Made by a program: the position numbers and the translations under genes | DNA from: Lytechinus pictus | Taxonomy: Eukaryota | DNA length: 64,000 bases | Direction of reading: 5' to 3' | NCBI RefSeq assembly: GCF_037042905.1 | Contig: NC_087252.1 | Coordinates: 23,498,001 to 23,562,000, forward strand | The notes under the pieces: generated by a model | What the model saw: the letters and a program-made list of their open reading frames with translations, nothing else | Database searches by the model: none | What the model was told of the DNA's origin: nothing | Part shown: piece by piece, positions 9,247-63,829 of the stretch | Position numbering within the stretch: position 1 is the stretch's first letter | Layout: every line of letters starts with the position of its first letter

Positions 9247-9301
9247 ACTAAGTGTTTATCATTAAAAAATCACTTTCTTTACTTCTTTAATATGATTGCA
9301 G

Positions 9302-12069
9302 ATATGCTGCAGGCTGTGCACTCTTTCCAGTGCCAATTCTGTGAAGAGGTTTTTTCATCCAGCATTCAGATGGCACAACACTGGCAAGACCACCATCAGG
9401 AGGACCACATAGAGCAGGAAACATCAATCTACCACCTCCTCCAGACAACGGCCTTTGGTCTCACTCAGTCCATGGCCAACGGCGCAAGTGATGTCCTCAA
9501 GGGTAGCAGTCGCTTGACCGATTCTAACCACCATGTCGCTCCTGAAAAGCGTTCCACGAAAGATGCCATGTACGAGGAGAATTTAGTATCAGAGGAAACA
9601 TGTCAAGGACTCGGCCAAACCCATTCTGTAGAGAGTTCAAGTCAAGTAGCTGTCTCTGTTAAATCTTCAGACTTGAAATCTGTCCCCAGGAAAGGATTGA
9701 AGGATTTCTGTTGTGAAATATGTGGTCGGACTTACACAACCACATCAAATCTGAACAAGCACTATCGCACACATACAGGTGTTCTCTACTTCTGTAGCCT
9801 TTGTCAGAAAGGTTTTAGATATAAAGAGAGTCTAAAGAAACATGAAAAATGCCATACACAAAGAAGGATTAAGAATCATGACTGTGTCTATCAGTGCCAA
9901 TTTTGCCACAAGAATTTTCCTGACAAACTCAGATTAAGTATTCACTTCCGTTCTCATCCTATGGAGAAAACGCACAAATGCAACCAGTGTGAACGAACCT
10001 TTCTCTACAAAAGTGGATTAAGGCGACATATGCTTTCACATGCTTCTGAAAAGGCACATATATGTCCCCACTGTACAAAAAGTTTCTTGACACTTCATAG
10101 TCTGAAGGCACATATCAAGACCCATTCTGGCAAGAAGCCGTTCTCCTGTGACAAATGTAAAAAGGCTTTTGCTCAGAAGCTTACTTTAATCGAGCACATG
10201 AAATTACACGAGGACACTAGATCTTATAAGTGTAGCTACTGTGGAAAAGGTTTCCATCAGCGATCAACACTGTGGGGACATGAGAAGCTACACAAGCGTG
10301 AGAAGGTTCACAGATGCAGTAAATGTGAGGAACAATTTGGGACGTTGAAAGAACTTCGGAGGCATGAGAAGAAGCATTGGCTGGATTCCGGGCTGCACAA
10401 AACTGTTGACATTGATGGGGAACCTGTCAAGGATTTGGTGCAAATTAGGCGATTTGAATGTGATCTCTGTGGGGAAGCGTTCACCCAAAAGGCAGTGCTG
10501 CAAACACACTACAGGAGACATACGGGCGAAAAGCCATTTAAATGTAATGTATGTGGCAAACAATTCAGACACTTGGCATCCAGCAAGAGACATGGTTTAA
10601 TCCACAAAGGTATCAAACAGTATCATTGTGATATTTGTGGTAAATCATTCACCAAGAAGTCCTACTTGAAGTGGCATGTCTCCAAGCTTCACTCCACTGT
10701 TAATGACAGCAGACTGAAAGTTTGTGATGATACTTGTAAAGGGAATTTGGAAGCTACAGACTCCCAGTCGGTGACAGGAACTGGCGATAGGTGGAATGAG
10801 GATCCAGATAGTGTGTTATCACTAGAGGATTGTGGTGGTAGTGATATGGAGTCTGATAATCAGAGACCATTCAGTAGTTTGGAGGAGAAAGAAGGTCAGT
10901 GTAGAGATGAACTGGAGGACTTTACACAAAAACATGGATTTGGATGTCAGAGAAAACAAAGTGATTGTGAGATTAACCAGATGGAGAGTCTGAATACCCC
11001 TGACCATCCAAGCTCGCAGATCATGGAGGGAACAAACGTAATAGTGTCATTTCAAGATGTTTGCGATGTGCCAATCAATGAAGAATGTGTCCACACAATG
11101 AATGTCCTGGACCATGTCATGCAACTGGCTGAGATTTCCCAAAGAGATGTTGAAGAGTGTCAGATTCAGATTGAAAATGTTCCGTTAGGTCAGGCAGCTC
11201 CAGGTGAAGGGAGAAGCATGGAAACCGATCCAGATAAGAATAAAACACTGCTACATTTATCTCTTGATGATGTAACCATTGGCAATCAGAAACCTTCTGC
11301 AGTCAAACCCTTTGTGTGTGAATTATGTGGACGAATGTACAGCTCAAACTCGTGCCTTCTGAGACACAAGCAAACTCACCTGATCTCCAAGCCCCACAAG
11401 TGCAATCTTTGTGACAAGTCCTATAGCCGACGACCACTCTTACGAGAGCACATTCAGTTCTCGCACAGTGAGCAGCACAGGGTTCACCAGTGTTCATTCT
11501 GTGAGAAATCGTTTCCCAATGCGACCAGATTAGAATTGCATGTCCGTACCCACACACAAGACAAACCCTTCAAGTGCCAAGAATGCCAGAAGGGATTTGC
11601 AGACTCCAGCAATCTCAGGAGACATGAACGCAGTCATAAGGGGTTGCGAAGACATAAGTGCCCTCAGTGTGGACAGCTGTTCTCTGAGAAGCCTGCCCTT
11701 CAGCGGCATCAGGCCAGGCATCAAGGAGAGAAGAACTATCAATGTCAGCACTGCACCAAGTCATTTGTTCTGAAGACGGACTTACAGAGCCACATCATCT
11801 TACATAAAGCTGCCAAGGAATCGGAATGCTCTGCTTGTGGTTTGACATTCAAGCGACAAATCAGCTTCAATCTTCATCAGGCTACCACCAAGAAAAGTGC
11901 CAGGAAATGCAGGGTGTGTGGCATGGGATTTGCGAATGAATGCAAGAGACGCCAACATGAACTCAATGAGCATAAGTTTATTATCAATGACTCAGGTTTT
12001 GTTTGTGGGTGCTGCGGGAAGAGTTTTGATAGGCTCGGTAAAATGGTGAACCATATAAGAGAGCATTAA
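9302..12069 (+). CDS. C2H2 zinc-finger protein (~20-21 fingers, two main clusters separated by an acidic linker), main coding exon
   Basis: 925-aa ORF with repeated CxxC-x12-Hx3-4H motifs and TGEKPF-like linkers; pyrimidine tract and TTGCAG acceptor ending at 9301; stop TAA at 12069. Confidence 0.93.
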
Positions 12070-12281: not shown

Positions 12282-13985
12282 AGGAGAATGAAACTCTTGG
12301 AGCAAGTTAGTTTTTGTGAAAGCAGAAAAATCAAAGAATAAGATCAACAAAAGTTTGAGTAAAATAGGACTAGCAATAGAAGAGTTATGAGCATTTGAAT
12401 GTCGAGATCACTAATGCTATGGAGATCCTCCCATTGGCAATGCGACCAAGATCTATGATGTCACAGATGAACAACTCTCCCCTTTTGGACACTGAAAATA
12501 TACCCCAAAACATCTCTTTTTGCTCATTCTAATCATATGACAAACGATTCATCAATGATATAATGTTGTGAAACCTCTGTACTTGTCCCCTCATAAAGAG
12601 AACACCTCACCTTGTGATAGACTCTATAAAAGTGAGAATATAAGTGAAATAAGTACTAAAGTAATGAGGGAGTTGTACGTGTGTGACATCACAGATCTTG
12701 GTCGCATTGCCAATGGGAGGATCTACATGGCATTAGTGATCTCAATATTCAAATGCTCATAACTTTCTTATTATTCATTCAATCTTCCTCAAACTTTCAA
12801 CAATATGTTTCTTTGATTTTTGTCTCACCTGCATAGCAGAGTGAGACTATAGGGGCCGCTTTTCCGACGGCGACGGCGGCGGCGGCGTCAACACCAAATC
12901 TTAACCTGAGGTTAAGTTTTTGAAATGACAGCATAACTTAGAAAGTATATGGACCTAGTTCATGAAACTTGGCCATAAGGTTAATCAAGTATTACTGAAC
13001 ATCCTGCCTGAGTTTCATGTCACATGACCAAGGTCAAAGGTCATTTAGGGTCAATGAACTTAGACCATGTTGGGGGAATCAACATCAAAATCTTAACCTA
13101 AGGTTAAGTTTTTGAAATGTCATCATAAATTAGAAAATATATGGACCTAGTTCATGAAACTTATACATAAGGTTAATCAAGTATCACTGAACATCCTGCA
13201 TGAGTTTCACGACACATGACCAAGGTCAAAGGTCATTTAGGGTCAATGAACTTTGGCCGAATTGGGGGTATCTGTTGAATTACCATCATAACTTTAAAAG
13301 TTTATGGATCTGATTCATGAAACTTGGACATAATAGTAATCAAGTATTACTGAACATCCTGTGCAAGTTTCAGGTCACATGATCAAGGTCAAAGGTCATT
13401 TAGGGTCAATGAACTTTGGCCAAATTGGGGTATTTGTTGAATTACCATCATAACTTTAAAAGTTTATGGATCTGATTCATGAAACTTGGACATAATAGTA
13501 ATCAAGTATTACTGAACATCCTGTGCAAGTTTCAGGTCACATGATCAAGGTCAAAGGTCATTTAGGGTCAATGAACTTTGGCCAAATTGGGGTATTTGTT
13601 GAATTACAGCCATAAATTTTAAAGTGTGTTGGTCTAGTTCATAAAACTTGGACATAAGTCTAGAGTAATCAAGTATCACTGAACATCCTGTGCGAGTTTC
13701 AGGTCACATGAACAAGGTCAAAGGTCATGTAAGGTCAAAGAACTTTGGCCACGTTGGGGGTATTTGTTGAATTGCCATCATATCTCTATAAGTGTATTGG
13801 TCTAATTCATAAAACGTGGAAATACGAGTAACCAAGTATCACTGAACATCTTGTGCGAGTTATAGTAGTTTTCAAAATCAGCACTGCTGCTATATTGAAT
13901 CGCGTGATGCAGGTGAGACGGCCAGAGGCATTCCACTTGTTCTCTTTGATATGGATTCAGCTGGTTTCAAGGGTTTCATTCTCCT
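12282..13985. mobile_element. TTAA-flanked non-autonomous DNA transposon with long TIRs (Kolobok/piggyBac-type), just downstream of the ZNF stop
   Basis: TTAA|AGGAGAATGAAAC ... GTTTCATTCTCCT|TTAA; arms 12380-12466 and 12683-12765 are reverse complements. Confidence 0.8.
12819..13941 (+). mobile_element. Helentron-associated (HINE/DINE-like) non-autonomous element with internal tandem array, nested in 12282-13985
   Basis: Subterminal inverted repeats GTCTCACCTGCAT / ATGCAGGTGAGAC, short CGG microsatellite, ~6 tandem units of ~160-190 bp (CATGAAACTTGG...CAAGGTCAAAGGTCA), CTTGTT 3' end, inserted in a T-run without TSD. Confidence 0.7.
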
Positions 13986-23258: not shown

Positions 23259-24550
23259 TTACTGGGGTTCTGCTTTGATCTGTATTGGGGGACATACGGA
23301 AACAGGGGAGGGGCTGGCAGATTGCTCTCCACTGCTCTGCCTTGATCGACACACGTTGAGCGGGGAAGAACTCCCAGATTTCACCGTCAAGGGGGACGGC
23401 TTGCCGTTCACGTGTGCTTTCTCAGCAGATTGTCCCTCACGCGGTGTAGAATCCTGGTTCGAGTGCATGGTCATATGAAGTTTGAGATAGTTCGCGTGAG
23501 TAAAGGTCATGCAGCACTCGCTGCACATGAACGGTGTGTGCTCGCGTTGATGAATCTTTCCGTGCTCGTCCAGCAGTCGCTTGTTGGAAAACACTCTGCT
23601 GCAGAGCTTGCAAGGGAATCGCCTCTTGGCGTCCGCGAGGGGACCCTTACGCTTAAACGTATTGAACTTCGTGGACGGGACCTGTGCATTTCTCGACGTT
23701 GATGCTTTCTGAGTTGCGTGGACTTTGGAGTGAGATGCAAGGAGTGGGAGGGAGAGGAACTCCTCTCTACAAATGTTACATTTGAACTGGTTTCCATTCG
23801 TTTGCGTGCAAGCATGTCCCTTGAGGGTTGATAAGTCTGTGAAGGTCTTGCCACAGTGCAGGCAGGGGAACACTTTCTCTCCGCTGTGGATTCGTTCGTG
23901 CATCTGTTTATGACTCAGGCGGACAAATATGCGATCACAGAACTGGCATGGGAACAGCTGCTTGTCTTCTTTCTGAACAGAGTGCAGGAGTTCATGGGCA
24001 CGAAGCCCTGCGGCGCGGTGGAACGCCTTCCCGCACATGTTGCACTTGAACGGCTTGATGCTACTGTGCTTCCGGATGTGAAGCAAGAACTTTGACTCGT
24101 GGCTGAACCACTTCAAGCAGATTCTGCAGACAAAGTGACCCTGTCCATTATGAACCCTCTGGTGCTCATGGAAGTCAAAGGCATGAACAAAAGAAAGTCC
24201 ACACTTATTACAAACATAGGGCTTTTCTCCTGTATGTTGTCTTTCGTGGCTCTTTAGATTGAAGCTGAAGGCAAAGGACTTGTCACAGTGGGTGCACTTG
24301 AAAGACTTCTCCTTGACGTGTTTCAAACGATGACGATTGAGATCCACAAGGCAATTGAAGGTTTGTTCGCAGTCGGGGCAGTGAAGCACAGGAGATGACA
24401 CAGTGTAAAATGGATTGGAGTGGAGAGACGAAGAACCAGGGGCATCTAGGTTGGTGTTCTGCCGCTGCAGGGGCGTCTTGTTGCCACTCTCGCTACCTGC
24501 AGGAGTCTTGAAGAAACAAGGACACTTCTTTCCTGGCTTTGCTCCATCAT
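23259..24550 (-). CDS. C2H2 zinc-finger protein 2, terminal exon (10 fingers)
   Basis: Acceptor TTTACAG at 24551; frame continuous with ORF 23259-24401; CxxC..HxxxH repeats and a TGEKPY linker; stop TAA at 23259. Confidence 0.9.
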
Positions 24551-53833: not shown

Positions 53834-54299
53834 TATTCTTTCTTTGCCCTTCTATTGTAGTTTTATTATGATATTTCCTATTTTGGTCCCTCAGCTCTAC
53901 TGTGTGATACTTTATGTTGCATTTTTAAATTGTCTTCGGTCATCTCCATCAGCTTACATACCTGTTATGTTTTGCTATGCATAAACATTGAAACTAAGTT
54001 TCAGGGCTTGCCTCTCATACAGGCATACAGCTTTTCTTGGATTTCTGTGTTTTCGGTACTTTTTTGGACAAGGCAGTTCGATCTATTGAGCAAAGTTCAA
54101 ATTTTGTTCTCTTTTCTATTTTGTTATCAATTTTCATGATTGACATGCTTTTTGATATATTTTACTATGTACATAAAAATCAATAAAACAGTACAAAATA
54201 TTTATCATGACAACTTTCAATGCATCTCTGCGTAGTACTTTTGATAACAAGTCATTTACATCAATAACGCAATATCATTACTTTTATCGAATTTAGTAC

Positions 54300-57154
54300 T
54301 TGTTTGTTTGTTTGTTTTATTTTATTTCTGCGTTCACAATACATTATCAAAAATTATTTACATTGTTTGCAATATATAAAACAATCCATAATGTTTACAA
54401 CATAAACATAACAATTAGAAAAAAAAAATGGTTTGGGTATATACTTCACATTACATAAAATAGAAAAAAACGATTTGGGCATATACTTCACATTAGGATG
54501 ATAATAAAAAGCAGCATAAACAAATGAACGCAGGAGACCGCCATCGTGAGCGGTTAAGCTTGTAGTTGATGGCGGCCTCATAAAAAGGGTTCGTGACTAA
54601 GATCGGTAATTGCTGAACAAGTGGGTGCGATGCAGGTGCAGGTGCGGGTGCTGTAAATAGCAGTATAATTATTGTTATTATTTTTAATTTATAGTTTTTG
54701 GTTGTTAATGATAATCAATTTGAAGTGTCGGATGAATAAGATTGAATTATATTTTTTTTAAGAGTTGATTTTAATGAGTATAAAGTAGAACAAGATTTAA
54801 TATTGTTTGCAAGATTATTCTAAATGTCTGGACCATGATGTCGAATTGATTTAGAGGTAATTAACAGTCTGGGGTTTGTGAGATGAAAGTTTCCAGATGT
54901 ACGAGTTGGGTAGGTATGGACAGAACTATTGAACTTAAACATGTCATCAAAAGACGATGGGAGTAGATTATTGATATACTTAAACATAATGATAGCTACT
55001 TGAAGAGTGTACAAGTCGGCAACTTTCAGTGTTTTCTGTTTGAAAAATAAAGGGTCAGTGTGAGCCAGGTAATGCGACCCTGTACAAATGCGAATAATTC
55101 TCTTTTGTAATCTAAAAATAGAAGTCAGCTTTGTAGAGCCACAATTAGCCCACACAACGTTACAATAGGTTATGTACGGGAGTACTAATGAATTATACAA
55201 TAGGAATAAAGTTTTAAGAGGCAAGATAAATTTTAACTTAGAAATAATTCCAATGCTTCTTGAAATACACATTGTAATATGGTGCAGATGCTCATTCCAA
55301 GATAAAGCTTCATCTATGATGACCCCTAAAAATCTAGAGTGCGTTTTACGTTTTAATGACTTGCCGTCAATCTGTAAGTGAATTTGAGTGTTAGAATTAT
55401 GAGAATGATGTTGAAAATATATGTAATGAGTTTTTTGTGTGTTCAGAGATAATTTGTTAGCTTTGAACCACTGTGATACTTTATTTATTTCATGATTTAA
55501 AATATTGTATAAGGAAGTGAGATTTTTATGAGAAAAAAAAATATTTGTGTCGTCAGCGAATAATACAAAAGATAAAATGGATGATGTATTAATAATGTCA
55601 TTTACATATATCAAAAATAATAGTGGGCCTAAGATGGAGCCTTGAGGGACACCACAATGAACTAAAAGTGAATCAGAGTCGTGACCATTAAATGAGACGT
55701 ATTGTTTTCGATTTCTTAAGTAATCTTTAAACCAAAGAAGGGATTGACCCCGTACGCCATAATAGTTGAGTTTTGAGAGTATAATGTCGTGATTAAGTGT
55801 ATCGAATGCCTTACTAAGGTCACAAAATATCCCAATGACATGTTCTTTGTTAGCAATGGCGTTTGTAATTTTGTCATAGATTTGAATTAATGCCAAGTTT
55901 GTTGAGTAATTCTTCCTAAAGCCATATTGATTAGAATTTAGCAGATTGTGTTTGATAATGAATTTATAAAGTCTATTATATACTATTTTTTCTAAGATTT
56001 TTGGTATAGTTGGGAGAAGAGAAATGGGGCGATAATTACTAATTTCATGGGGATTGTCTTTTTTGAAAATTGGATTGACTTTGGCAATTTTGAATAAGTC
56101 GGGAAAAACTCCTTGTGATAATGATTTATTAAAAATGTTACTAAGAGGATTAGCAAGTGGGTGGATTATTTCTTTTAAAAGAGACATACTAATTATATCA
56201 TGTCCATGTGATTTTGAACTGTTAAGAGACCGTGTAATGTTGATAATTTCAGTGGGGTCCGTAGGGTTAAGAAATATAGAGTGTGGATTTGATTCGTGGA
56301 GATAGTCGGTGAACCGCGCATTAGGGCTATTAATTTTATTAAATATAAGTATGTTGGTTAAATGTTTTGATGTAAGGTAGTTTTAACTCACAGGTTAGAA
56401 AAATTGGTAAGTGGTCTGAAACTTCAGAGCATAGAATTCCACCTATCATTTTGTTGTTCATGTTATGTACGTTGGAAAAAATGTTGTCAATTTTAGTTGA
56501 TGAATTTGGGCTGATTCTAGTGGAATTATTTATAAATGAATGGAAGCCAAATGAGTACATTAGTTTTATGAAATTGTTTGATTTATTATTGTCGACTGAG
56601 GGTAGGAAATTGATATTAAAATCACCAAAAATAAAACAATTTTTATTTTCATTACTTATTATATGGAGATATTGCTCTGTTTCCTCATAAAAAGAATCAA
56701 AATTAGAACCTGGTGGTCGATAGATTAGACCTATGACGACATTTTTAAATTCTGTGTTTTCAATTTCAATAAACAAAGACTCAGCATTTAAGAGTTTCAC
56801 ATCGGAACGGATCTTAAATGTTAGTTTTTCGGCTATATAGAATGCTACCCCTCCACCTCTTTTTCCTTTGCGGTCTGCCCTAATCAGTTTATAATCTGGT
56901 AAATTAAACAAATCTGGTGAATTTTCATGTAGCCATGTCTCGCTAATACCAATAACAGAAAAGTTGAAATTGTTTAACGTGTGCAAGAGATTTTCAAAAT
57001 ATTCAAAGTTTCTATTCAGACTTCTTAAATTTGCGTGTAAAAGAGAAATATCATGATTACTACTAAATATGTTGTTAAATTCTTGAGGTGTGTAATATTT
57101 ACTGTTGTGTGAATTTTCTATTAAATGCTCAGGAATAAAGGAGAGTGAATTCAT
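54300..57154 (-). mobile_element. Decayed, 5'-truncated CR1/L2-group (Crack-like) LINE
   Basis: APE ORF 56339-57154 (NLRS, ISETW, GDFN, SDH) and RT ORF 54820-56187 (YRPIS, DLSKAFD, GVPQGSILGP, FADD); 3' stem-loop 54533-54579; AATAAA + (AAAC)n tail near 54300. Confidence 0.92.
54715..57154 (-). pseudogene. LINE ORF2 pseudogene (internal deletion/frameshift near 56339; premature TAG at 54820)
   Basis: EN-RT linker is very short and out of frame; GPDI*NNL where W is expected. Confidence 0.85.
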
Positions 57155-57544
57155 CCAAATTGATGAAATGTAAAGTACCAGAGATTATGTAAGGGGATAT
57201 ACTGCGATCGTGCTTGTGGTGAGGGTGCATGTGTGTGTAACTGTGGTGCTGATGTGCAGTTAATATAAATGAAAAATATGTCTACAAAAATAACAAGACC
57301 CATCTTGGTCAGCATATACAATATAGGATGCAGAACGGCAGAGCTCAACCACCTAAGTACATAGATACATGAGTTGAGATCATTACACATAAATAATAAA
57401 CGATCATAATACAAATGAATTAAAAGCAAACCCAGAAATATGCTTACGGATTTGTATTGATAGTCAAAGATCTAGTATGTATTAATTGGCATGATAAAAT
57501 CACTCCCATTAATTCCATGTATTAACACAGAAGGCGTAAAGTTT

Positions 57545-59282
57545 GAATAGCCACGCCCTCCCTGATCAGATAGGTGAATGTGTGTGTGCTAGTTTAATAT
57601 TTATGGATAATTATGCGTATGGGCCTGTCTTGTATTGGGAAATAATGAAGTTTGTTTCGAAGCGCTTATCTATCTGCCTTGAAGTACACGATCAGTCGCG
57701 CGTTTTGAAAGGTACGTCAAATCATGCATGAAATAGCCACACCTCCTCTGATCAGGGAGCGCTGTATACATGATGTGTGTATAGGCACACATATTGAATT
57801 TAGCAAATTGGACAAATCAATATAATTGGTCACATACAATGTGAAATCAACCCGTCTATCCCCTATTGAATATTCAAGTCTCGTGTCACAATAAAGATTG
57901 ATCATGCATGTATAACACTGCCCTCTCTGACCAGATACTTGGGTACATGCGTGTTTTCATATTAGGACTCATTTGCAAAATAAGAATTTTGTAAGCTCAC
58001 ATCAATCATATCAGTTATGAATGAAATAACCTGAATGCCGGGCGTAGGAGTACTAGTATATAGGTATACGTTGATCATGCATGGAATAACCACGCCCCTT
58101 AGATCAGACACTATACGTGCATGGTCTATGCCGGCGAACAAGACGTAATTGACATGTTTAACATGCACATCATGTAATTGGTATGCATATTGTAAGTTCA
58201 ACCCAATACATAAAGAGGGGGGGGGGGGGGTCATCAAAATCTTCGGGATGGCTGTTACAGTGATTTACAAGATAATAAAACGATACAGAATATATTTTAC
58301 AATAGAGTGGTTTCCTAATAACTGAAAGCATTCCGAAGTGTAATCAACATGTTCGTTGCAAATTGAGAATTCAAACCATGCCTGCTAAAATAAAGAGTTC
58401 GTTACTAAGCATTATCTGCCAACATAAAAATGTCATTGTAATTCCAAGGATTAGAATATCCCACACTCTCTGATCAGATAATAAGACTTAAAGAGTACAT
58501 CATATAGGCCAATGCAGGTATACAAAGTAAAAAGATCACTAAACATACAAAGAAAATTTGGGGATAAAGAGGTTTCCTAATGACATTCCGCATTATATTC
58601 AACACATAATAGATCAATGCGAGTCGTGTGAAGGAGACTATTCCTGCCTTTCCTAGCGAACATTTGTGTACGACGTACACGCATGTATAGCCACACCTTT
58701 ACTGCTCACTTACAAAACGTTATGGCGCATGCGTGTTTTCAATTCAAGTGTTTGTAGCAAAGCTCGTACATAATAAACCATTAAACAGAAATTTGGCGGT
58801 GATAAGCCACACCCCAATCTGATCAGACAGTGGTGTAAAACAGGCACGCGTAAGTTCATGCATGACCAACGATATTAACACAACAATCACAGATCGACAA
58901 ATTGTCGATCCATGATTGTTGCGTCAATAGGGGTTTTACATTTCAAACGAACCGTTTAAAATACTTGTGTTCATTATAGTCTCATTCATTGCTCGATCAA
59001 GCAAATGGTATTACATTTCAAGCGAATTTGTTAAAATACTCGAGATGGAGAACAATTAATAATGCAGTTACCAGAAGAAAACCTTTGGTCTGCAGTACTA
59101 AGGTTTGCAAAAATTCTGGGGGTACTTAAATGATACAAATACCCTGACAAATTGGAAATAATTAGTAATCAATTAAGTGATATTATTCAGCATTGAGAAT
59201 TTTAACCAGATTGTATTGTGAGTCGCCTACACGCATGCGTAGCCACACCCTCACTGACGAGATGTTATTGCGCATGCGTATA
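57545..59282. repeat. Array of ~8 copies of a conserved motif (CATGCATG-n3-TARCCACRCCC-n3-CTGATCAGA) separated by non-repetitive spacers
   Basis: Motif cores near 57548, 57733, 57912, 58087, 58459, 58687, 58803 and 59240. Confidence 0.7.
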
Positions 59283-59319
59283 ACAATTACAGAGTTTGAG
59301 GCAATACTCGTACCTAATA

Positions 59320-59789
59320 GGGCACACATGAGTATTACAGACCCCCATTCACTCACGTGTTATATCATAGCTCATCAAAAAATCATTAAAAATCAATCCC
59401 TCGATAGATTTTGCTTTAATTCACTGACATTAGTCACAATTAATAGTACATTAAGACTTGATATGTTAATCAGGTACTTGCCCAGCTCAATCAAAAGTTA
59501 AATGGCCTGAAATAAGACTAACCATAATTTCGGCCAGTTCATTGCCAGAAAAAACAGAACTGCATTGTGGGTAATAATAATTAAAATGAAATACAAAAAT
59601 GCAGTCTAGCCTCCCCAAACGCCTTAATTATGAAAGAGTATGAACATAGCATTATCTCTATCGTTCTTCTTTTGATATACAAACATTTGATCTATTTTTA
59701 ATGAATTATTTTAATCAATAAAGTCATGTGATCTTTACTTACGCCTGTCCGACATGCTTTGCGCGCAGATGAATTACTCTCATGTGCCC
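59320..59789. mobile_element. 470-bp MITE-like element, copy 1
   Basis: Imperfect TIR GGGCACA..GAGTA / TACTC..TGTGCCC; nearly identical to 60788-61256 but with unrelated flanks. Confidence 0.7.
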
Positions 59790-60787
59790 TATACTGAGGG
59801 TCAAATGACAAAAAGTTGAAAATAATGGTCTCAAAAGAAAGAGTGGGTTCTCCTGCATTCAATACCTAATCTGACTAAACGTGTTAAAAGAAAAGAAAAC
59901 GTCTCATTAGACGCCCCTGATTTTAATGTAAAAATACAGTGTTCCATTCATATATTTTATGCGCTTCCTATAGGCTATGGTATTGCAGCTACAAGTTCTA
60001 CTTGTTTGATGTCAATCAATGGGCTAAAATATATATTGTGTGGAGTTACAACTTCTTGTTAGCATGTTTAAATGTTTAATTTTGTTCGAAGTGATTTATT
60101 ACCTTTTTTATTCGCATACAAATAAACAAAGTAAATAAAAGAAAATTGATAACAAACAAAGAGTGTAAGCAATTCTTGTGCTCATATCGCCTCTCTTCCT
60201 CATTATAACTCACAAGTTGGGGGGGGGGGGTGCTATAGATATATACCATCAACCCCGCCTTGCGTACAAGCTAGGAGGATGGGGGTATGTACCCCGACTC
60301 AGCTCGCCCCCCCCCCCGCGTAGCTTTCAACGAAGTGAATAGTATTCAAGTGCGCAATCTATGATGTATAACATCTGACCATGCTGACTGAGACAAGTTT
60401 ATGTATTTTAATGTTTTGTTCATCTTTCTTTCTCGGCGTGCTCTAAATATTGAAAATAGGAATCCTTGATGATAATTAGAAGTTATGTATCATTTTGAAA
60501 TCCCTACTTATTTCATTTCACACTCTCAACAGATCTGATCTCCTATTGGCAGTAGAAACTCGCATTTCTGCATGATAAATGATAATAGACATTGAATATA
60601 CATTTGAAAGCGTCATTTCAGCATCGTAAGCGATAAATGCACCGAATGCCGAGTTATATACTTATCAACTGCTGTTAAACATAACCTATCACTTTGTATA
60701 AAACTGTTTGAAGCATTCTCACCACTGATTTCTAGCAGACGACGCCCAGCCATAGCAACGACAGTGTAGAAGTGTAGTCGCGCTATA

Positions 60788-61256
60788 GGGCACACATGAG
60801 TATTACAGACCCCCATTCACTCACGTGTTATATCATAGCTCATCAAAAAATCATTAAAATCAATCCCTCGATAGATTTTGCTTTAATTCACTGACATTAG
60901 TCACAATTAATAGTACATTAAGACTTGATATGTTAATCAGGTACTTGCCCAGCTCAATCAAAAGTTAAATGGCCTGAAATAAGACTAACCATAATTTCGG
61001 CCAGTTCATTGCCAGAAAAAACAGAACTGCATTGTGGGTAATAATAATTAAAATGAAATACAAAAATGCAGTCTAGCCTCCCCAAACGCCTTAATTATGA
61101 AAGAGTATGAACATAACATTATCTCTATCGTTCTTCTTTTGATATACAAACATTTGATCTATTTTTAATGAATTATTTTAATCAATAAAGTCATGTGATC
61201 TTTACTTACGCCTGTCCGACATGCTTTGCGCGCAGATGAATTACTCTCATGTGCCC
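60788..61256. mobile_element. 470-bp MITE-like element, copy 2
   Basis: Matches 59320-59789 with only ~2 visible differences. Confidence 0.7.
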
Positions 61257-61571
61257 AATACCAGGGAAGTGTTAAATAACACTTCCCTGGTTCATGCATG
61301 ACCAACGGTATTGGCACACAACAATCATAGATCGACAATAGGGGGTTTACATTTCAAACGAACCGTTTAAAATACTTGTGTTCATTACAGTCTCATTCAT
61401 TGCTCGATCAAGCAAATGGTATTACATTTCAAGCGAATTAGTAACAATAGTTGAGATGGAGAACAATAAATACTGCAATTACCATAAGAATACCTTTGGT
61501 ATGCAGTACTAAGGTTTGAAAAAATTCTGGGGGTACTTATCCAAATCAAATAATTATAACAAATTTGTATT

Positions 61572-62392
61572 TGAAGAGCTCACTTGCAAAAGGGGTTAGG
61601 TCCATTTTTCATCAAATTTGATTTTTTTTGTCTCAATGTATAGATTTTAGTAGCTCTATAAGATGATACCAAAGAAAAGTTGAAATTCCCATTACAAATT
61701 ATCTAAAATGGAAAAGAAAAATCCCTTTTTTTTCAAAAGGGGTTAGGTCCATTTCAGTTGTGTTGCAAAAGGGGTTAGGTCCACACATAATTTTTTTGGA
61801 AAAGAATATTTAAAAAAATATGAAGACAGGTAGATTTCTTTTATACCCAATTTTATGTTCTCATGGTAGGGTATCATGAAAATTTAGTTTCGCATAAGAA
61901 TATTGCAATATGGGAGAATAAAAAAATCATTTTGTTGGAGTGGACCTAACCCCTTTTGCAAACAAACTATTTTGAAGAGCTTAGTTGTCAAAAGGGGTTA
62001 GGTCCATTTTTCATAAATTTTTATTGTTTTCTGTCTCAACACCTCTAAATTTTTAGTCGTTCTGATGAAAACAAGGAAAATTTGAAATTCATGTGAAAAC
62101 CTGAATAGAAGTGACAAAGAATAATCACTTTTTTAATCAGAATAGATTGGATTCATTTCAGTTTACTTGCAAAAGGGGTTAGGTCCACAATGATAATGTT
62201 TAAAAGAATATATAAAGAAAAATTGAAGACAGGTAGATTTCTTTTATACCCAATTTTATGTTCACATGATAGGGTAGTACCTCATGACAATTTAGTTTCT
62301 CATGGGAATATTGCAGTACGTCAGAATAAAAAACATGGTTTTTCTCGGAATGGTAAAAAGTGGACCTAACCCCTTTTGTAACTACACTCTTC
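61572..62392. mobile_element. Tandem dimer of a ~400-bp MITE-like unit
   Basis: TGAAGAG...CAAAAGGGGTTAGGTCCA starts at 61572 and 61972; each unit ends with inverted TGGACCTAACCCCTTTTG; final CTCTTCA. Confidence 0.7.
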
Positions 62393-63534: not shown

Positions 63535-63829
63535 TCATTCACCAAATAGTTCAGCAGCGAGATGGATTTGATCAGCCTTTTCTAGAGCAGTCTGCAAAGC
63601 TTCTAGCTCTGTATTCTCTGTTTGATTATTTCTCCACCTACGGAGCATTGAAAGAGTTCCCATGTACGACACTCCTGTCTCTCTCTTGTTCTCCTCAACG
63701 TAACGGCCAATATCCTCTGGTCCGAAGCCAAGGGCCATTCCCAGATCATCTATCTCTTTACGTGAGGCAACTTTATCTGCAACGGTTCCTAGGATGTCAT
63801 CAAAGTCCCTCTCTAGAGCTGGATTCATC
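63535..63829 (-). CDS. Death-domain-encoding terminal exon; gene probably extends right of the window
   Basis: Helical pattern ILGTVADKV..IDDLGMALGF..EDI..Y..GTLSMLRRW..LQTALEKADQIHLAAEL is typical of death domains; TCTAG acceptor at 63830. Confidence 0.8.

What the first reader, a model, noticed from the sequence alone, without database searches (positions are those of the whole stretch)
57545..59282. Conserved ~35-40-bp motif repeated at ~180-bp period with unique spacers
Seen in the sequence: a core (TGATCATGCATG)-n3-TARCCACRCCC-n3-CTGATCAGA recurs in the same orientation at ~57548, 57733, 57912 and 58087 (steps of about 185, 179 and 175 bp), then at 58459 (~2 periods later), 58687, 58803 and 59240. 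The ~140-bp spacers show almost no mutual similarity by eye. An ageing satellite should decay evenly, so conservation limited to the core suggests selection on a protein-binding module. Established: CCACRCCC is a KLF/Sp-type site, and GCGCATGCGT (58726, 59270) resembles an NRF1/P3A2 site. Inference: a phased, roughly nucleosome-spaced regulatory array, or a cluster of tiny transcription units each with its own promoter motif (conceptually like Ruby-motif piRNA loci in nematodes). It is not explained by any TE or gene in the window.
Basis: partly seen in the sequence, partly recalled or inferred. Interest (0 to 1): 0.72.

Follow-up and report, generated by a model that had tools for sequence, protein, structure and literature searches.

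The report
Decayed 178-bp repeat, conserved GC-rich core
A sea-urchin intergenic stretch holds an old nine-unit tandem repeat whose short GC-rich block of protein-binding-type motifs has decayed about half as fast as the rest, but it lies in transposon-laden DNA missing from related loci and shows no RNA, so it is most likely a fossil.

Summary
Eight same-strand copies of TAGCCACRCCC-n3-CTGATCAGA lie at 57.5-59.3 kb, often flanked by CATGCATG/CGCATGCG palindromes. A profile finds no other copy in the 64 kb.

- **Period:** about 178 bp. The 436-bp gap holds a 275-bp repeat insertion. The 371-bp gap holds a cryptic ninth unit whose core is now poly-G.
- **Spacers:** they are not unrelated. Sensitive alignment finds faint, roughly in-register homology, equal to about 50% pairwise identity against 66% in the core. 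This is a decayed whole-unit tandem repeat whose core evolves about half as fast.
- **Not a gene array:** there is no Rfam or tRNA hit and no stable fold. Indels break every reading frame. Two ribo-depleted RNA-seq runs gave no read.
- **Context:** the array lies in a 7.2-kb block (54298-61539). The block starts with the (CAAA)n tail of a young LINE and also holds MITEs. It is absent from the intact "empty site" at two related Lytechinus pictus loci.
- **LINE link:** the array is not the LINE's 5' UTR, because family homology stops near 57313-57327.

Best reading: a fossil promoter/enhancer-type tandem monomer carried in mobile or transduced DNA. Neutral decay or a live regulatory cluster are not excluded. 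Interest is low to moderate. The scan's notes hold no earlier report of this motif.

The parts
57534..57598 (+). Unit m1 conserved module (TAGCCACGCCC-TCC-CTGATCAGATA, then GGTGAATGTGTGTG); box A absent
   Evidence: nhmmer E 1.1e-11; exact pattern match 57548-57569
57718..57789 (+). Unit m2 module (ATCATGCATG / TAGCCACACCT / CTGATCAGG)
   Evidence: nhmmer E 1.3e-10
57900..57966 (+). Unit m3 module (GATCATGCATG / TAACACTGCCC, degenerate / CTGACCAGATA / TACATGCGTGTTTTCA)
   Evidence: nhmmer E 6.7e-12
58072..58134 (+). Unit m4 module (GATCATGCATG / TAACCACGCCC / AGATCAGACA)
   Evidence: nhmmer E 1.1e-07
58201..58435 (+). Cryptic ninth unit with lost core. Poly-G 58217-58230 lies where the core should be. 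Its spacer 58269-58385 is homologous to the m5 spacer 58532-58647.
   Evidence: Local alignment score 29.5, z 8.2
58441..58509 (+). Unit m5 module (TATCCCACACT / CTGATCAGATAA); box A absent
   Evidence: nhmmer E 6.6e-07
58673..58745 (+). Unit m6 module (ACACGCATGTA / TAGCCACACCT / CTGCTCAC, degenerate / GGCGCATGCGTGTTTTCA). Out of phase; 74% identical to m8 over 100 bp.
   Evidence: nhmmer E 1.8e-08; BLAST 58676-58775 vs 59228-59319
58789..58857 (+). Unit m7 module (AAGCCACACCC / CAAT / CTGATCAGACA)
   Evidence: nhmmer E 9.4e-09
58854..59128 (+). 275-bp repeat element 'A' inserted in the m7-m8 spacer. It contains a 57-bp palindrome (58873-58929). A second copy lies at 61290-61539 (83%).
   Evidence: BLAST; the repeat finder D2, D10, I1
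59224..59292 (+). Unit m8 module (ACACGCATGCG / TAGCCACACCC / CTGACGAG, degenerate / TGCGCATGCGTA). It has the least CpG decay of the eight units.
   Evidence: nhmmer E 2.9e-11
54298..57327 (-). Young LINE (APE endonuclease plus RT; ORFs 57154-56339 and 56187-54820) with a GCAGAAATAAAA(CAAA)n 3' tail that abuts the flank X. Family homology ends at about 57313-57327.
   Evidence: Pfam; 3'-end match to relatives; contig breaks, depth and RNA loose end
54298..61539 (.). Lineage-specific block (LINE, array, MITEs and other repeats). It is absent from the intact junction at L. pictus loci L001 and L002.
   Evidence: BLAST synteny; junction alignment A2
59317..59794 (+). High-copy 478-bp MITE (TIR ATAGGGCACACATGAG) that truncates the array's right edge. 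A second copy at 60785-61261 is 99.4% identical.
   Evidence: BLAST; depth 25-40x the flanks and many loose ends at both termini
61540..61585 (+). Remnant of the ancestral junction sequence (TCCAAATCAAATAATTATAACAAATTTGTATTT), which continues flank X as in L. pictus

Best explanation
The array is the fossil of a short tandem repeat with nine units of about 178 bp. Each monomer carried a GC-rich, promoter/enhancer-type module. That module has a KLF/Sp CACCC/GC box (TAGCCACRCCC) next to the palindrome CTGATCAG, flanked by NRF1/P3A2-like palindromes (CGCATGCG, mostly CpG-decayed to CATGCATG or CATGCGTG).

Shown:
- Whole units were duplicated, because spacers keep faint homology at roughly matching offsets.
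- The array is old. Spacers are at about 50% pairwise identity.
- The core has changed about half as fast (66%).
- The array now lies in a 7.2-kb block of mobile-element-associated DNA that related loci lack.
- No long RNA from the array was seen in the two runs sampled.

Inferred:
- The slower decay reflects past, and possibly residual, binding of sequence-specific dimeric or zinc-finger factors to the module. This is what one sees in regulatory monomers of mobile elements and in tandem repeats that carry a protein-binding box.
- The array reached this locus as a passenger, by one of two routes. It may have been co-mobilised with the adjacent LINE, since the LINE tail lies at one end of the block and a GTAC(TT) duplication or microhomology lies at the other. 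Or it came by nested insertions.
- At this locus the array is probably decaying rather than working.
For: - Motif clustering is far above chance and confined to this array.
- The period is about 178 bp once the 275-bp insert is removed and the cryptic unit is counted.
- Spacers keep residual homology: mean z 1.28, 4 of 28 pairs with z>4, and 74% over 100 bp for m6/m8.
- Simulation places the spacers at about 0.50 pairwise identity, against 0.66 for the core.
- The R position and the box A/D variants follow CpG-to-TpG/CpA decay (sequence).
- Boxes A, C and D are 8-bp palindromes, and indels between boxes break every reading frame. The signal is therefore at the DNA level, not coding.
- The block 54298-61539 is absent from an intact empty site at L001 and L002.
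- The LINE tail sits exactly at the left edge of the block.
- No RNA reads fell on 57458-59230 in two runs.
Against: - No other copy of the array or its monomer could be searched for in this genome, so a mobile-element origin is inferred from context only.
- Related LINEs (L003, L004) carry no such array.
- The rate difference is only about twofold. The core was also picked after the fact as the best-conserved window.
- In the youngest pair (m6/m8) the core (68%) is no better kept than the flank (74%).
- The L. pictus loci may be paralogues rather than orthologues.
- The RNA sampling was shallow, about 6% of each run, and blind to small RNAs.
Confidence: 0.45

Rival explanations
1. This is a neutral old minisatellite. 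The core only seems conserved. It is GC-rich and free of indels, whereas the AT-rich spacers accumulate indels and slippage that destroy alignability. No factor binds and there is no function, past or present.
For: - The core is only 66% identical, and each box is intact in only half of the units.
- In the youngest pair (m6/m8) the core is no better kept than the flank (sequence).
- CpG decay is evident inside the NRF1-like boxes.
- The block is absent from related loci.
- No RNA was seen.
Against: With indels included in the simulation, 66% identity would give a mean spacer z of about 10, not 1.3. Box B, TAGCCACRCC, is kept in 6 of 8 units, including otherwise random contexts (m1, m5, m7).
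Confidence: 0.25
2. This is a live host cis-regulatory element: a homotypic cluster of composite KLF/Sp plus palindrome sites acting now as an enhancer, silencer or insulator on neighbouring genes (the death-domain gene or the zinc-finger genes).
For: Eight same-orientation composite sites lie in 1.7 kb, far above chance. The core decays more slowly than the spacers. The motifs match known transcription-factor consensus types (established knowledge).
Against: The whole block is missing from the intact junction at two related L. pictus loci. Half of the sites are degenerate. The array is interrupted by a repeat insertion and truncated by a MITE. No transcription was seen nearby apart from repeats.
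Confidence: 0.15
3. These are monomers of the adjacent LINE's 5' UTR, like mouse L1 A/Tf monomers, read here in antisense. They would belong to an older 5' end that the young subfamily has since replaced.
For: - The array lies 220 bp upstream of the LINE's 5' end.
- The LINE tail and the far end of the block could mark one insertion event.
- The LINE 5' UTR 57155-57327 aligns weakly to m1 (z 3.6, p about 0.002 before correction for 8 tests).
- Three RNA reads from other LINE copies continue beyond 57327 into CACACCC...TGATTCA.
Against: - In both DNA runs the contigs break at 57283-57312, and depth falls to the level of the surrounding block there.
- The loose-end match to the core is not significant (best p about 0.04 of 8 tests).
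- Relatives L003 and L004 have no upstream monomers.
- The monomers are far too diverged for a young LINE.
Confidence: 0.07
4. This is an array of tiny motif-driven transcription units (small RNAs), or a repeated protein-binding module of a long non-coding RNA.
For: The architecture is a conserved promoter-like module followed by variable sequence. NRF1 and Sp/KLF sites are typical of TATA-less core promoters (established knowledge).
Against: There were no reads in two ribo-depleted runs, no Rfam or tRNA hits and no stable spacer folds. There are only 8 copies in 64 kb, all on one strand. The block is absent from related loci.
Confidence: 0.05

Closest known systems
Tandem repeats (satellite or minisatellite monomers) with one conserved protein-binding box, e.g. 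the CENP-B box in alpha satellite
   Same: Head-to-tail units of near-nucleosomal length, about 170-180 bp. A short box is better kept than the rest of the monomer.
   Different: There are only nine units at one known locus. The monomers are almost saturated with change, and the box resembles KLF/Sp and NRF1 sites rather than a centromere-protein site. No long homogeneous array is present.
Mouse L1 5'-UTR monomer arrays (A, Tf and Gf types, about 200 bp, each with transcription-factor sites)
   Same: Units of about 180-200 bp carry promoter-type sites and lie just upstream of a LINE.
   Different: LINE family homology stops 220 bp before the array. The motif orientation is antisense to the LINE. 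The monomers are highly diverged, and related LINEs lack them.
Homotypic clusters of transcription-factor binding sites in enhancers
   Same: Several copies of one composite site lie within 1-2 kb, separated by unconstrained sequence.
   Different: The regular period and the residual spacer homology show a tandem-duplication origin. There is no conservation at the related loci examined.
C. elegans Ruby-motif 21U-RNA (piRNA) units
   Same: A short conserved upstream motif is followed by sequence that differs from unit to unit.
   Different: Ruby units number in the thousands, lie on both strands and sit at a fixed distance of about 40 nt from a small RNA. Here there are 8 copies on one strand, no RNA evidence and an unrelated motif.
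Motif arrays with conserved spacing inside transposons of this same genome (earlier scan notes on Sola2-like, tyrosine-recombinase and Helentron/HINE elements)
   Same: Repeated short motifs with unique or diverged sequence between them, in transposon-rich sea-urchin DNA.
   Different: Those arrays are shared by many copies of an identified element. No element, terminal repeat or second copy could be tied to this array.

Membership tests
Tandem repeat with a conserved box (satellite/minisatellite type) | Head-to-tail units, same orientation, near-constant period | tested here: met
   Steps are 186, 178 and 175. After removing the 275-bp insert, R=0.76-0.77 at 178-180 bp. One unit (m6) is out of phase.
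Tandem repeat with a conserved box (satellite/minisatellite type) | Homology over the whole unit, not only the box | tested here: met
   Weak but present: mean spacer z 1.28, 4 of 28 pairs with z>4, patches at roughly matching offsets, m6/m8 74% over 100 bp. TRF itself reports nothing.
Tandem repeat with a conserved box (satellite/minisatellite type) | Many copies or several loci in the genome | not testable with these tools
   No copy elsewhere in the 64 kb. No second variant at 95% identity or more appeared in the reads. The whole genome could not be searched.
LINE 5'-UTR monomer array | The array is contiguous with the LINE and shared by other copies of the family | tested here: not met
   Contig breaks at 57283-57312 in two DNA runs, a depth drop there and an RNA loose end at 57327. 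Relatives lack it.
LINE 5'-UTR monomer array | Monomers closely similar within one element | tested here: not met
   Spacers are at about 50% pairwise identity.
Motif-dependent small-RNA units (Ruby/21U type) | Hundreds of units on both strands in large clusters | tested here: not met
   There are eight copies, all on the + strand, and none elsewhere in 64 kb.
Motif-dependent small-RNA units (Ruby/21U type) | Small-RNA 5' ends at a fixed offset from the motif | not testable with these tools
   Only ribo-depleted long-RNA runs were available. They gave zero reads on the array.
Conserved host enhancer (homotypic site cluster) | Presence at the corresponding locus in relatives | tested here: not met
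   Flanks X and Y are adjacent in L. pictus L001 and L002, with an intact junction. Orthology versus paralogy is unresolved.
KLF/Sp binding site | CCACRCCC core | tested here: met
   The core is perfect in m1, m4, m7 and m8, is CCACACCT in m2 and m6, and is degenerate in m3 and m5. Binding was not tested.
NRF1/P3A2 binding site | Palindrome YGCGCAYGCGCR with both CpG pairs | tested here: inconclusive
   Near-perfect at 58724-58735 and 59269-59280, and CGCATGCG at 59232. The other units have CpG-decayed CATGCATG or CATGCGTG. The consensus is recalled from knowledge, not scanned with a matrix.

The most novel reading that the evidence does not exclude
The array is a working, phased platform. Nine evenly spaced composite sites (a CACCC box, the CTGATCAG palindrome and NRF1-like palindromes) would recruit one factor set. 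They would either position chromatin as an insulator or enhancer, or fire small motif-dependent transcripts. That would be a deuterostome counterpart of motif-driven small-RNA units, or a DNA-level analogue of the repeated protein-binding cores of long non-coding RNAs.
Probability: 0.08. Interest if true: 0.7.

Novelty: new member of a known kind. Interest (0 to 1): 0.25.

Why it matters
If the slower decay of the core reflects factor binding, the array is a small natural experiment. It would show which 25-70 bp of a repeated regulatory monomer are needed in a sea urchin, and it gives a candidate composite site (CACCC box plus CTGATCAG, flanked by NRF1-like palindromes) to test in embryo reporter assays. 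The block also looks like a clean filled-site versus empty-site case of a LINE-associated multi-kilobase insertion, with the empty site preserved in related loci. Otherwise it is ordinary decaying repeat DNA. The lesson for the scan is that 'conserved motif with unique spacers' can be an old tandem repeat seen by eye.

Tried and rejected
- **Small RNA genes:** Rfam at gathering and at permissive thresholds, and tRNA search, gave nothing. The only weak miRNA-like hits fall on the palindrome of the inserted repeat. Spacer folds are no more stable than shuffles, except where that insert lies.
- **Tandem mini-exons:** rejected. Indels between boxes B and C shift the frame in m4, m5 and m7, stops occur in frame, and AG/GT edges are inconsistent (sequence).
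- **LINE 5' monomers:** the family boundary lies 220 bp short of the array. My by-eye match of the 30-nt RNA loose end to the core was not significant when tested. Relatives have no upstream repeats.
- **Defined transposon carrying the array:** no convincing terminal inverted repeats for 57328-61539. The GTAC(T/A)TA strings at the junctions are too short to decide between a target-site duplication and microhomology.
- **Wider occurrence:** the metagenome-wide exact scan gave 40 single hits and no arrays. By my rough estimate (collection size assumed) that is about what chance would give.
- **Second copy:** an exact look-up of an array ORF found nothing on record.
- **Literature:** searches for the motif and for Lytechinus tandem repeats gave nothing relevant.
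- **Earlier scan notes:** none mention this motif.
- **CpG content:** CpG observed/expected in the array (0.82) is unremarkable.

Full report
**1. What is there**

Reading 57000-60000 and anchoring on the CCAC of the core gives eight same-strand copies at 57551, 57737, 57915, 58090, 58461, 58691, 58807 and 59243.

- The strict pattern TARCCACRCCYnnnCTGATCAG (up to 3 mismatches) matches four times, against 0.03 expected from shuffles.
- A profile HMM built from 75 bp around each anchor recovers exactly these eight copies (E 7e-12 to 7e-7). Nothing else in the 64 kb scores below E 0.04.
Its order is: box A (GATCATGCATG in m2-m4, ACACGCATGYR in m6 and m8, absent in m1, m5 and m7), 3-4 nt, box B (TAGCCACRCCC), 3-4 nt, box C (CTGATCAGAYA), 10-20 nt, box D (CATGCGTG-like; GCGCATGCGT in m6 and m8).
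- Boxes A, C and D are 8-bp palindromes.
- The R in box B, and the variants of boxes A and D, are what CpG-to-TpG/CpA decay of an ancestral CGCATGCG/CCACGCCC would give.

**2. Period and gaps**

The steps are 186, 178, 175, 371, 230, 116 and 436.

- The 436-bp step contains a 275-bp repeat (58854-59128). A second copy, 83% identical, lies at 61290-61539. Without it the step is 161.
- The 371-bp step contains a cryptic unit. Its spacer 58269-58385 aligns to the m5 spacer 58532-58647 (z 8.2), and a poly-G run (58217-58230) lies where its core should be.
- With the insert removed, the anchors are coherent at 178-180 bp (R 0.76-0.77). Only m6 is out of phase. m6 is also 74% identical to m8 over 100 bp, so it may be a later duplicate.

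**3. Are the spacers unrelated?**

With stringent scoring most pairs look random, and TRF finds no repeat. With sensitive scoring and dinucleotide shuffles the picture changes.

- The mean z over 28 spacer pairs is 1.28, and four pairs exceed z 4.
- The aligned patches lie at roughly matching offsets from the anchors. Examples are AAATAAnGAnnTTnGT..AAGC in s1, s3 and s4, and TAATTGGT...TGTAAGTTCAACCC in m2 and m4.
- A simulation with substitutions and indels reproduces this signal at about 50% pairwise identity. The 26-column core is 66% identical, and spacers at that level would give a mean z of about 10.

So this is a whole-unit tandem repeat, now nearly saturated, in which the core has changed about half as fast. 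The contrast is real but modest. Each of boxes B and C is perfect in only four of eight units. In the youngest pair (m6/m8) the core (68%) is no better kept than the flank (74%).

**4. What it is not**

- There are no Rfam families at gathering or permissive thresholds and no tRNAs.
- Spacers do not fold better than shuffles on either strand, except where the palindromic insert lies.
- The core cannot be a mini-exon, because indels between the boxes shift the frame and stops occur.
- Two ribo-depleted total-RNA runs of this organism, each sampled at about 6%, gave zero reads over 57458-59230. The flanking LINE and MITE did collect reads.

**5. Context**

- *The LINE.* Immediately to the left is a LINE on the minus strand, with an APE endonuclease ORF at 57154-56339 and an RT ORF at 56187-54820. 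Relatives from other assemblies (L003, 80% identity to the RT ORF; L004, 70%) end with the same GCAGAAATAAAA plus microsatellite tail. This puts the 3' end of the LINE at 54298.
- *The LINE family boundary.* In two DNA runs the contigs break at 57283-57312, and depth falls from repeat level to the uniform level of the array. RNA reads from other copies diverge at 57327. The array contig (57283-59346) has no variant at 95% identity or more. The family therefore ends about 220 bp before m1, and the array is not part of the young LINE.
- *The MITE.* To the right, a 478-bp MITE (59317-59794) cuts the array's edge. It has a second copy 99.4% identical at 60785-61261 and is at very high depth.

**6. 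Related loci**

The 97-residue death-domain ORF at 63535-63828 (minus strand) has one homologue, a Lytechinus pictus protein at 78% identity. It is encoded at two loci, L001 and L002.

- Window 62393-63990 matches them at 86%, and window 53969-54299 at 85-91%.
- In L. pictus these two flanks are adjacent.
- The junction alignment reads TTTAGTACATATCCAAATCAGATAAT...ATTTAT in L. pictus.
- The window's left flank stops at TTTAGTAC and runs into the LINE tail. The remainder (TCCAAATCAAATAATTATAACAAATTTGTATTT) resumes at 61540, just after ...GGGGGTACTTA.

So 54298-61539 (7.2 kb: LINE, array, MITEs and other repeats) is an insertion relative to an intact empty site. A further MITE pair fills 61586-62375. 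The short GTAC(TT) shared by both edges could be a target-site duplication or a junction microhomology, and it cannot decide between the two. One LINE-mediated event that carried its upstream flank, or nested insertions, both fit. I cannot tell whether L001 and L002 are orthologues or paralogues. Either way, the array is far older than the insertion, so it came from elsewhere.

**7. Interpretation**

The most economical reading is a fossil tandem array of a regulatory-type monomer, with Sp/KLF and NRF1-like sites as in TATA-less promoters and mobile-element control regions. It was carried into this site as passenger DNA and is now decaying. Its binding-site module is retained somewhat better because it was once bound, and possibly still is weakly.

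- A purely neutral explanation is plausible, through different indel load in AT-rich spacers.
- A currently working host element is less likely, because the block is absent from related loci, half of the sites are degenerate and the array is interrupted.
- Tiny transcription units have no support, but they cannot be excluded without small-RNA data.

**8. Limits**

- The organism is coded in the run tables. 'Lytechinus' rests on earlier scan notes and on the L. pictus homologue.
- I could not search the genome for further copies of the module or of the block. That is the decisive missing step.
- The transcription-factor assignments rest on recalled consensus sequences, not on matrix scans or binding data.

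Noticed in passing
window 59317-59794 and 60785-61261: A 478-bp MITE with TIR ATAGGGCACACATGAG has two copies 99.4% identical, 1.5 kb apart. It sits at very high genomic depth, and RNA reads from many copies map in both directions.
   Followed up: partly
window 54298-57327 (minus strand): A young 3-kb LINE with an APE endonuclease ORF and an RT ORF separated by about 150 nt, no ORF1, and a GCAGAAATAAAA(CAAA)n tail. Relatives in two ENA assemblies also appear as two separate ORFs, so the split may be a family feature rather than damage.
   Followed up: partly
window 58854-59128 and 61290-61539: A 275-bp repeat ('A') has two direct copies at 83% identity. It begins TTCATGCATGACCAACG and ends GGGGGTACTTA. 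The first copy holds a 57-bp palindrome (58873-58929) that is partly deleted in the second. Its family is unidentified.
   Followed up: partly
window 61586-62375: By eye, two adjacent copies of about 390 bp of a MITE-like element whose ends read CAAAAGGGGTTAGGTCCA / TGGACCTAACCCCTTTTG, with the same string repeated internally. CpG observed/expected for 61540-62392 is only 0.21.
   Followed up: no
window 12888-13861; L001 14987-16084: A tandem repeat of period 162 (4.5 copies, containing AGGTCA-type strings), overlapped by a 192-bp-period row at 12888-13253. Window 12817-13941 matches both L. pictus loci at 90%. This probably corresponds to the Helentron/HINE central repeat described in an earlier scan note.
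   Followed up: partly
L001 20617-21427 and L002 20619-21355: In L. pictus the junction of the two flanks is itself tandemly duplicated (X-Y-X'-Y'). The two loci, 1.6 Mb apart on one chromosome, are nearly identical in structure. They may be a recent segmental duplication or an assembly duplicate.
   Followed up: no
window 57570/57733: One low-depth contig in run X5 (depth 6 against 110) joins the end of the m1 core directly to the start of the m2 core, skipping 162 bp. Only 22 nt lie on one side, so this may be an assembly artefact rather than a unit-loss allele.
   Followed up: no
window 63535-63828 (minus strand): A complete 97-residue ORF that looks death-domain-like by eye (no domain scan run on it). 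It is 78% identical to L. pictus LOC135155318 (149 aa), which carries a weak precomputed Pfam Death hit and whose gene spans 9.4 kb. The array lies 4-6 kb downstream of this exon.
   Followed up: partly
window 9292-12069 (+) and 23259-24401 (-): Two long C2H2 zinc-finger ORFs (925 aa with at least 11 fingers; 380 aa) lie in the same window as the motif array. No link to the array was tested.
   Followed up: no
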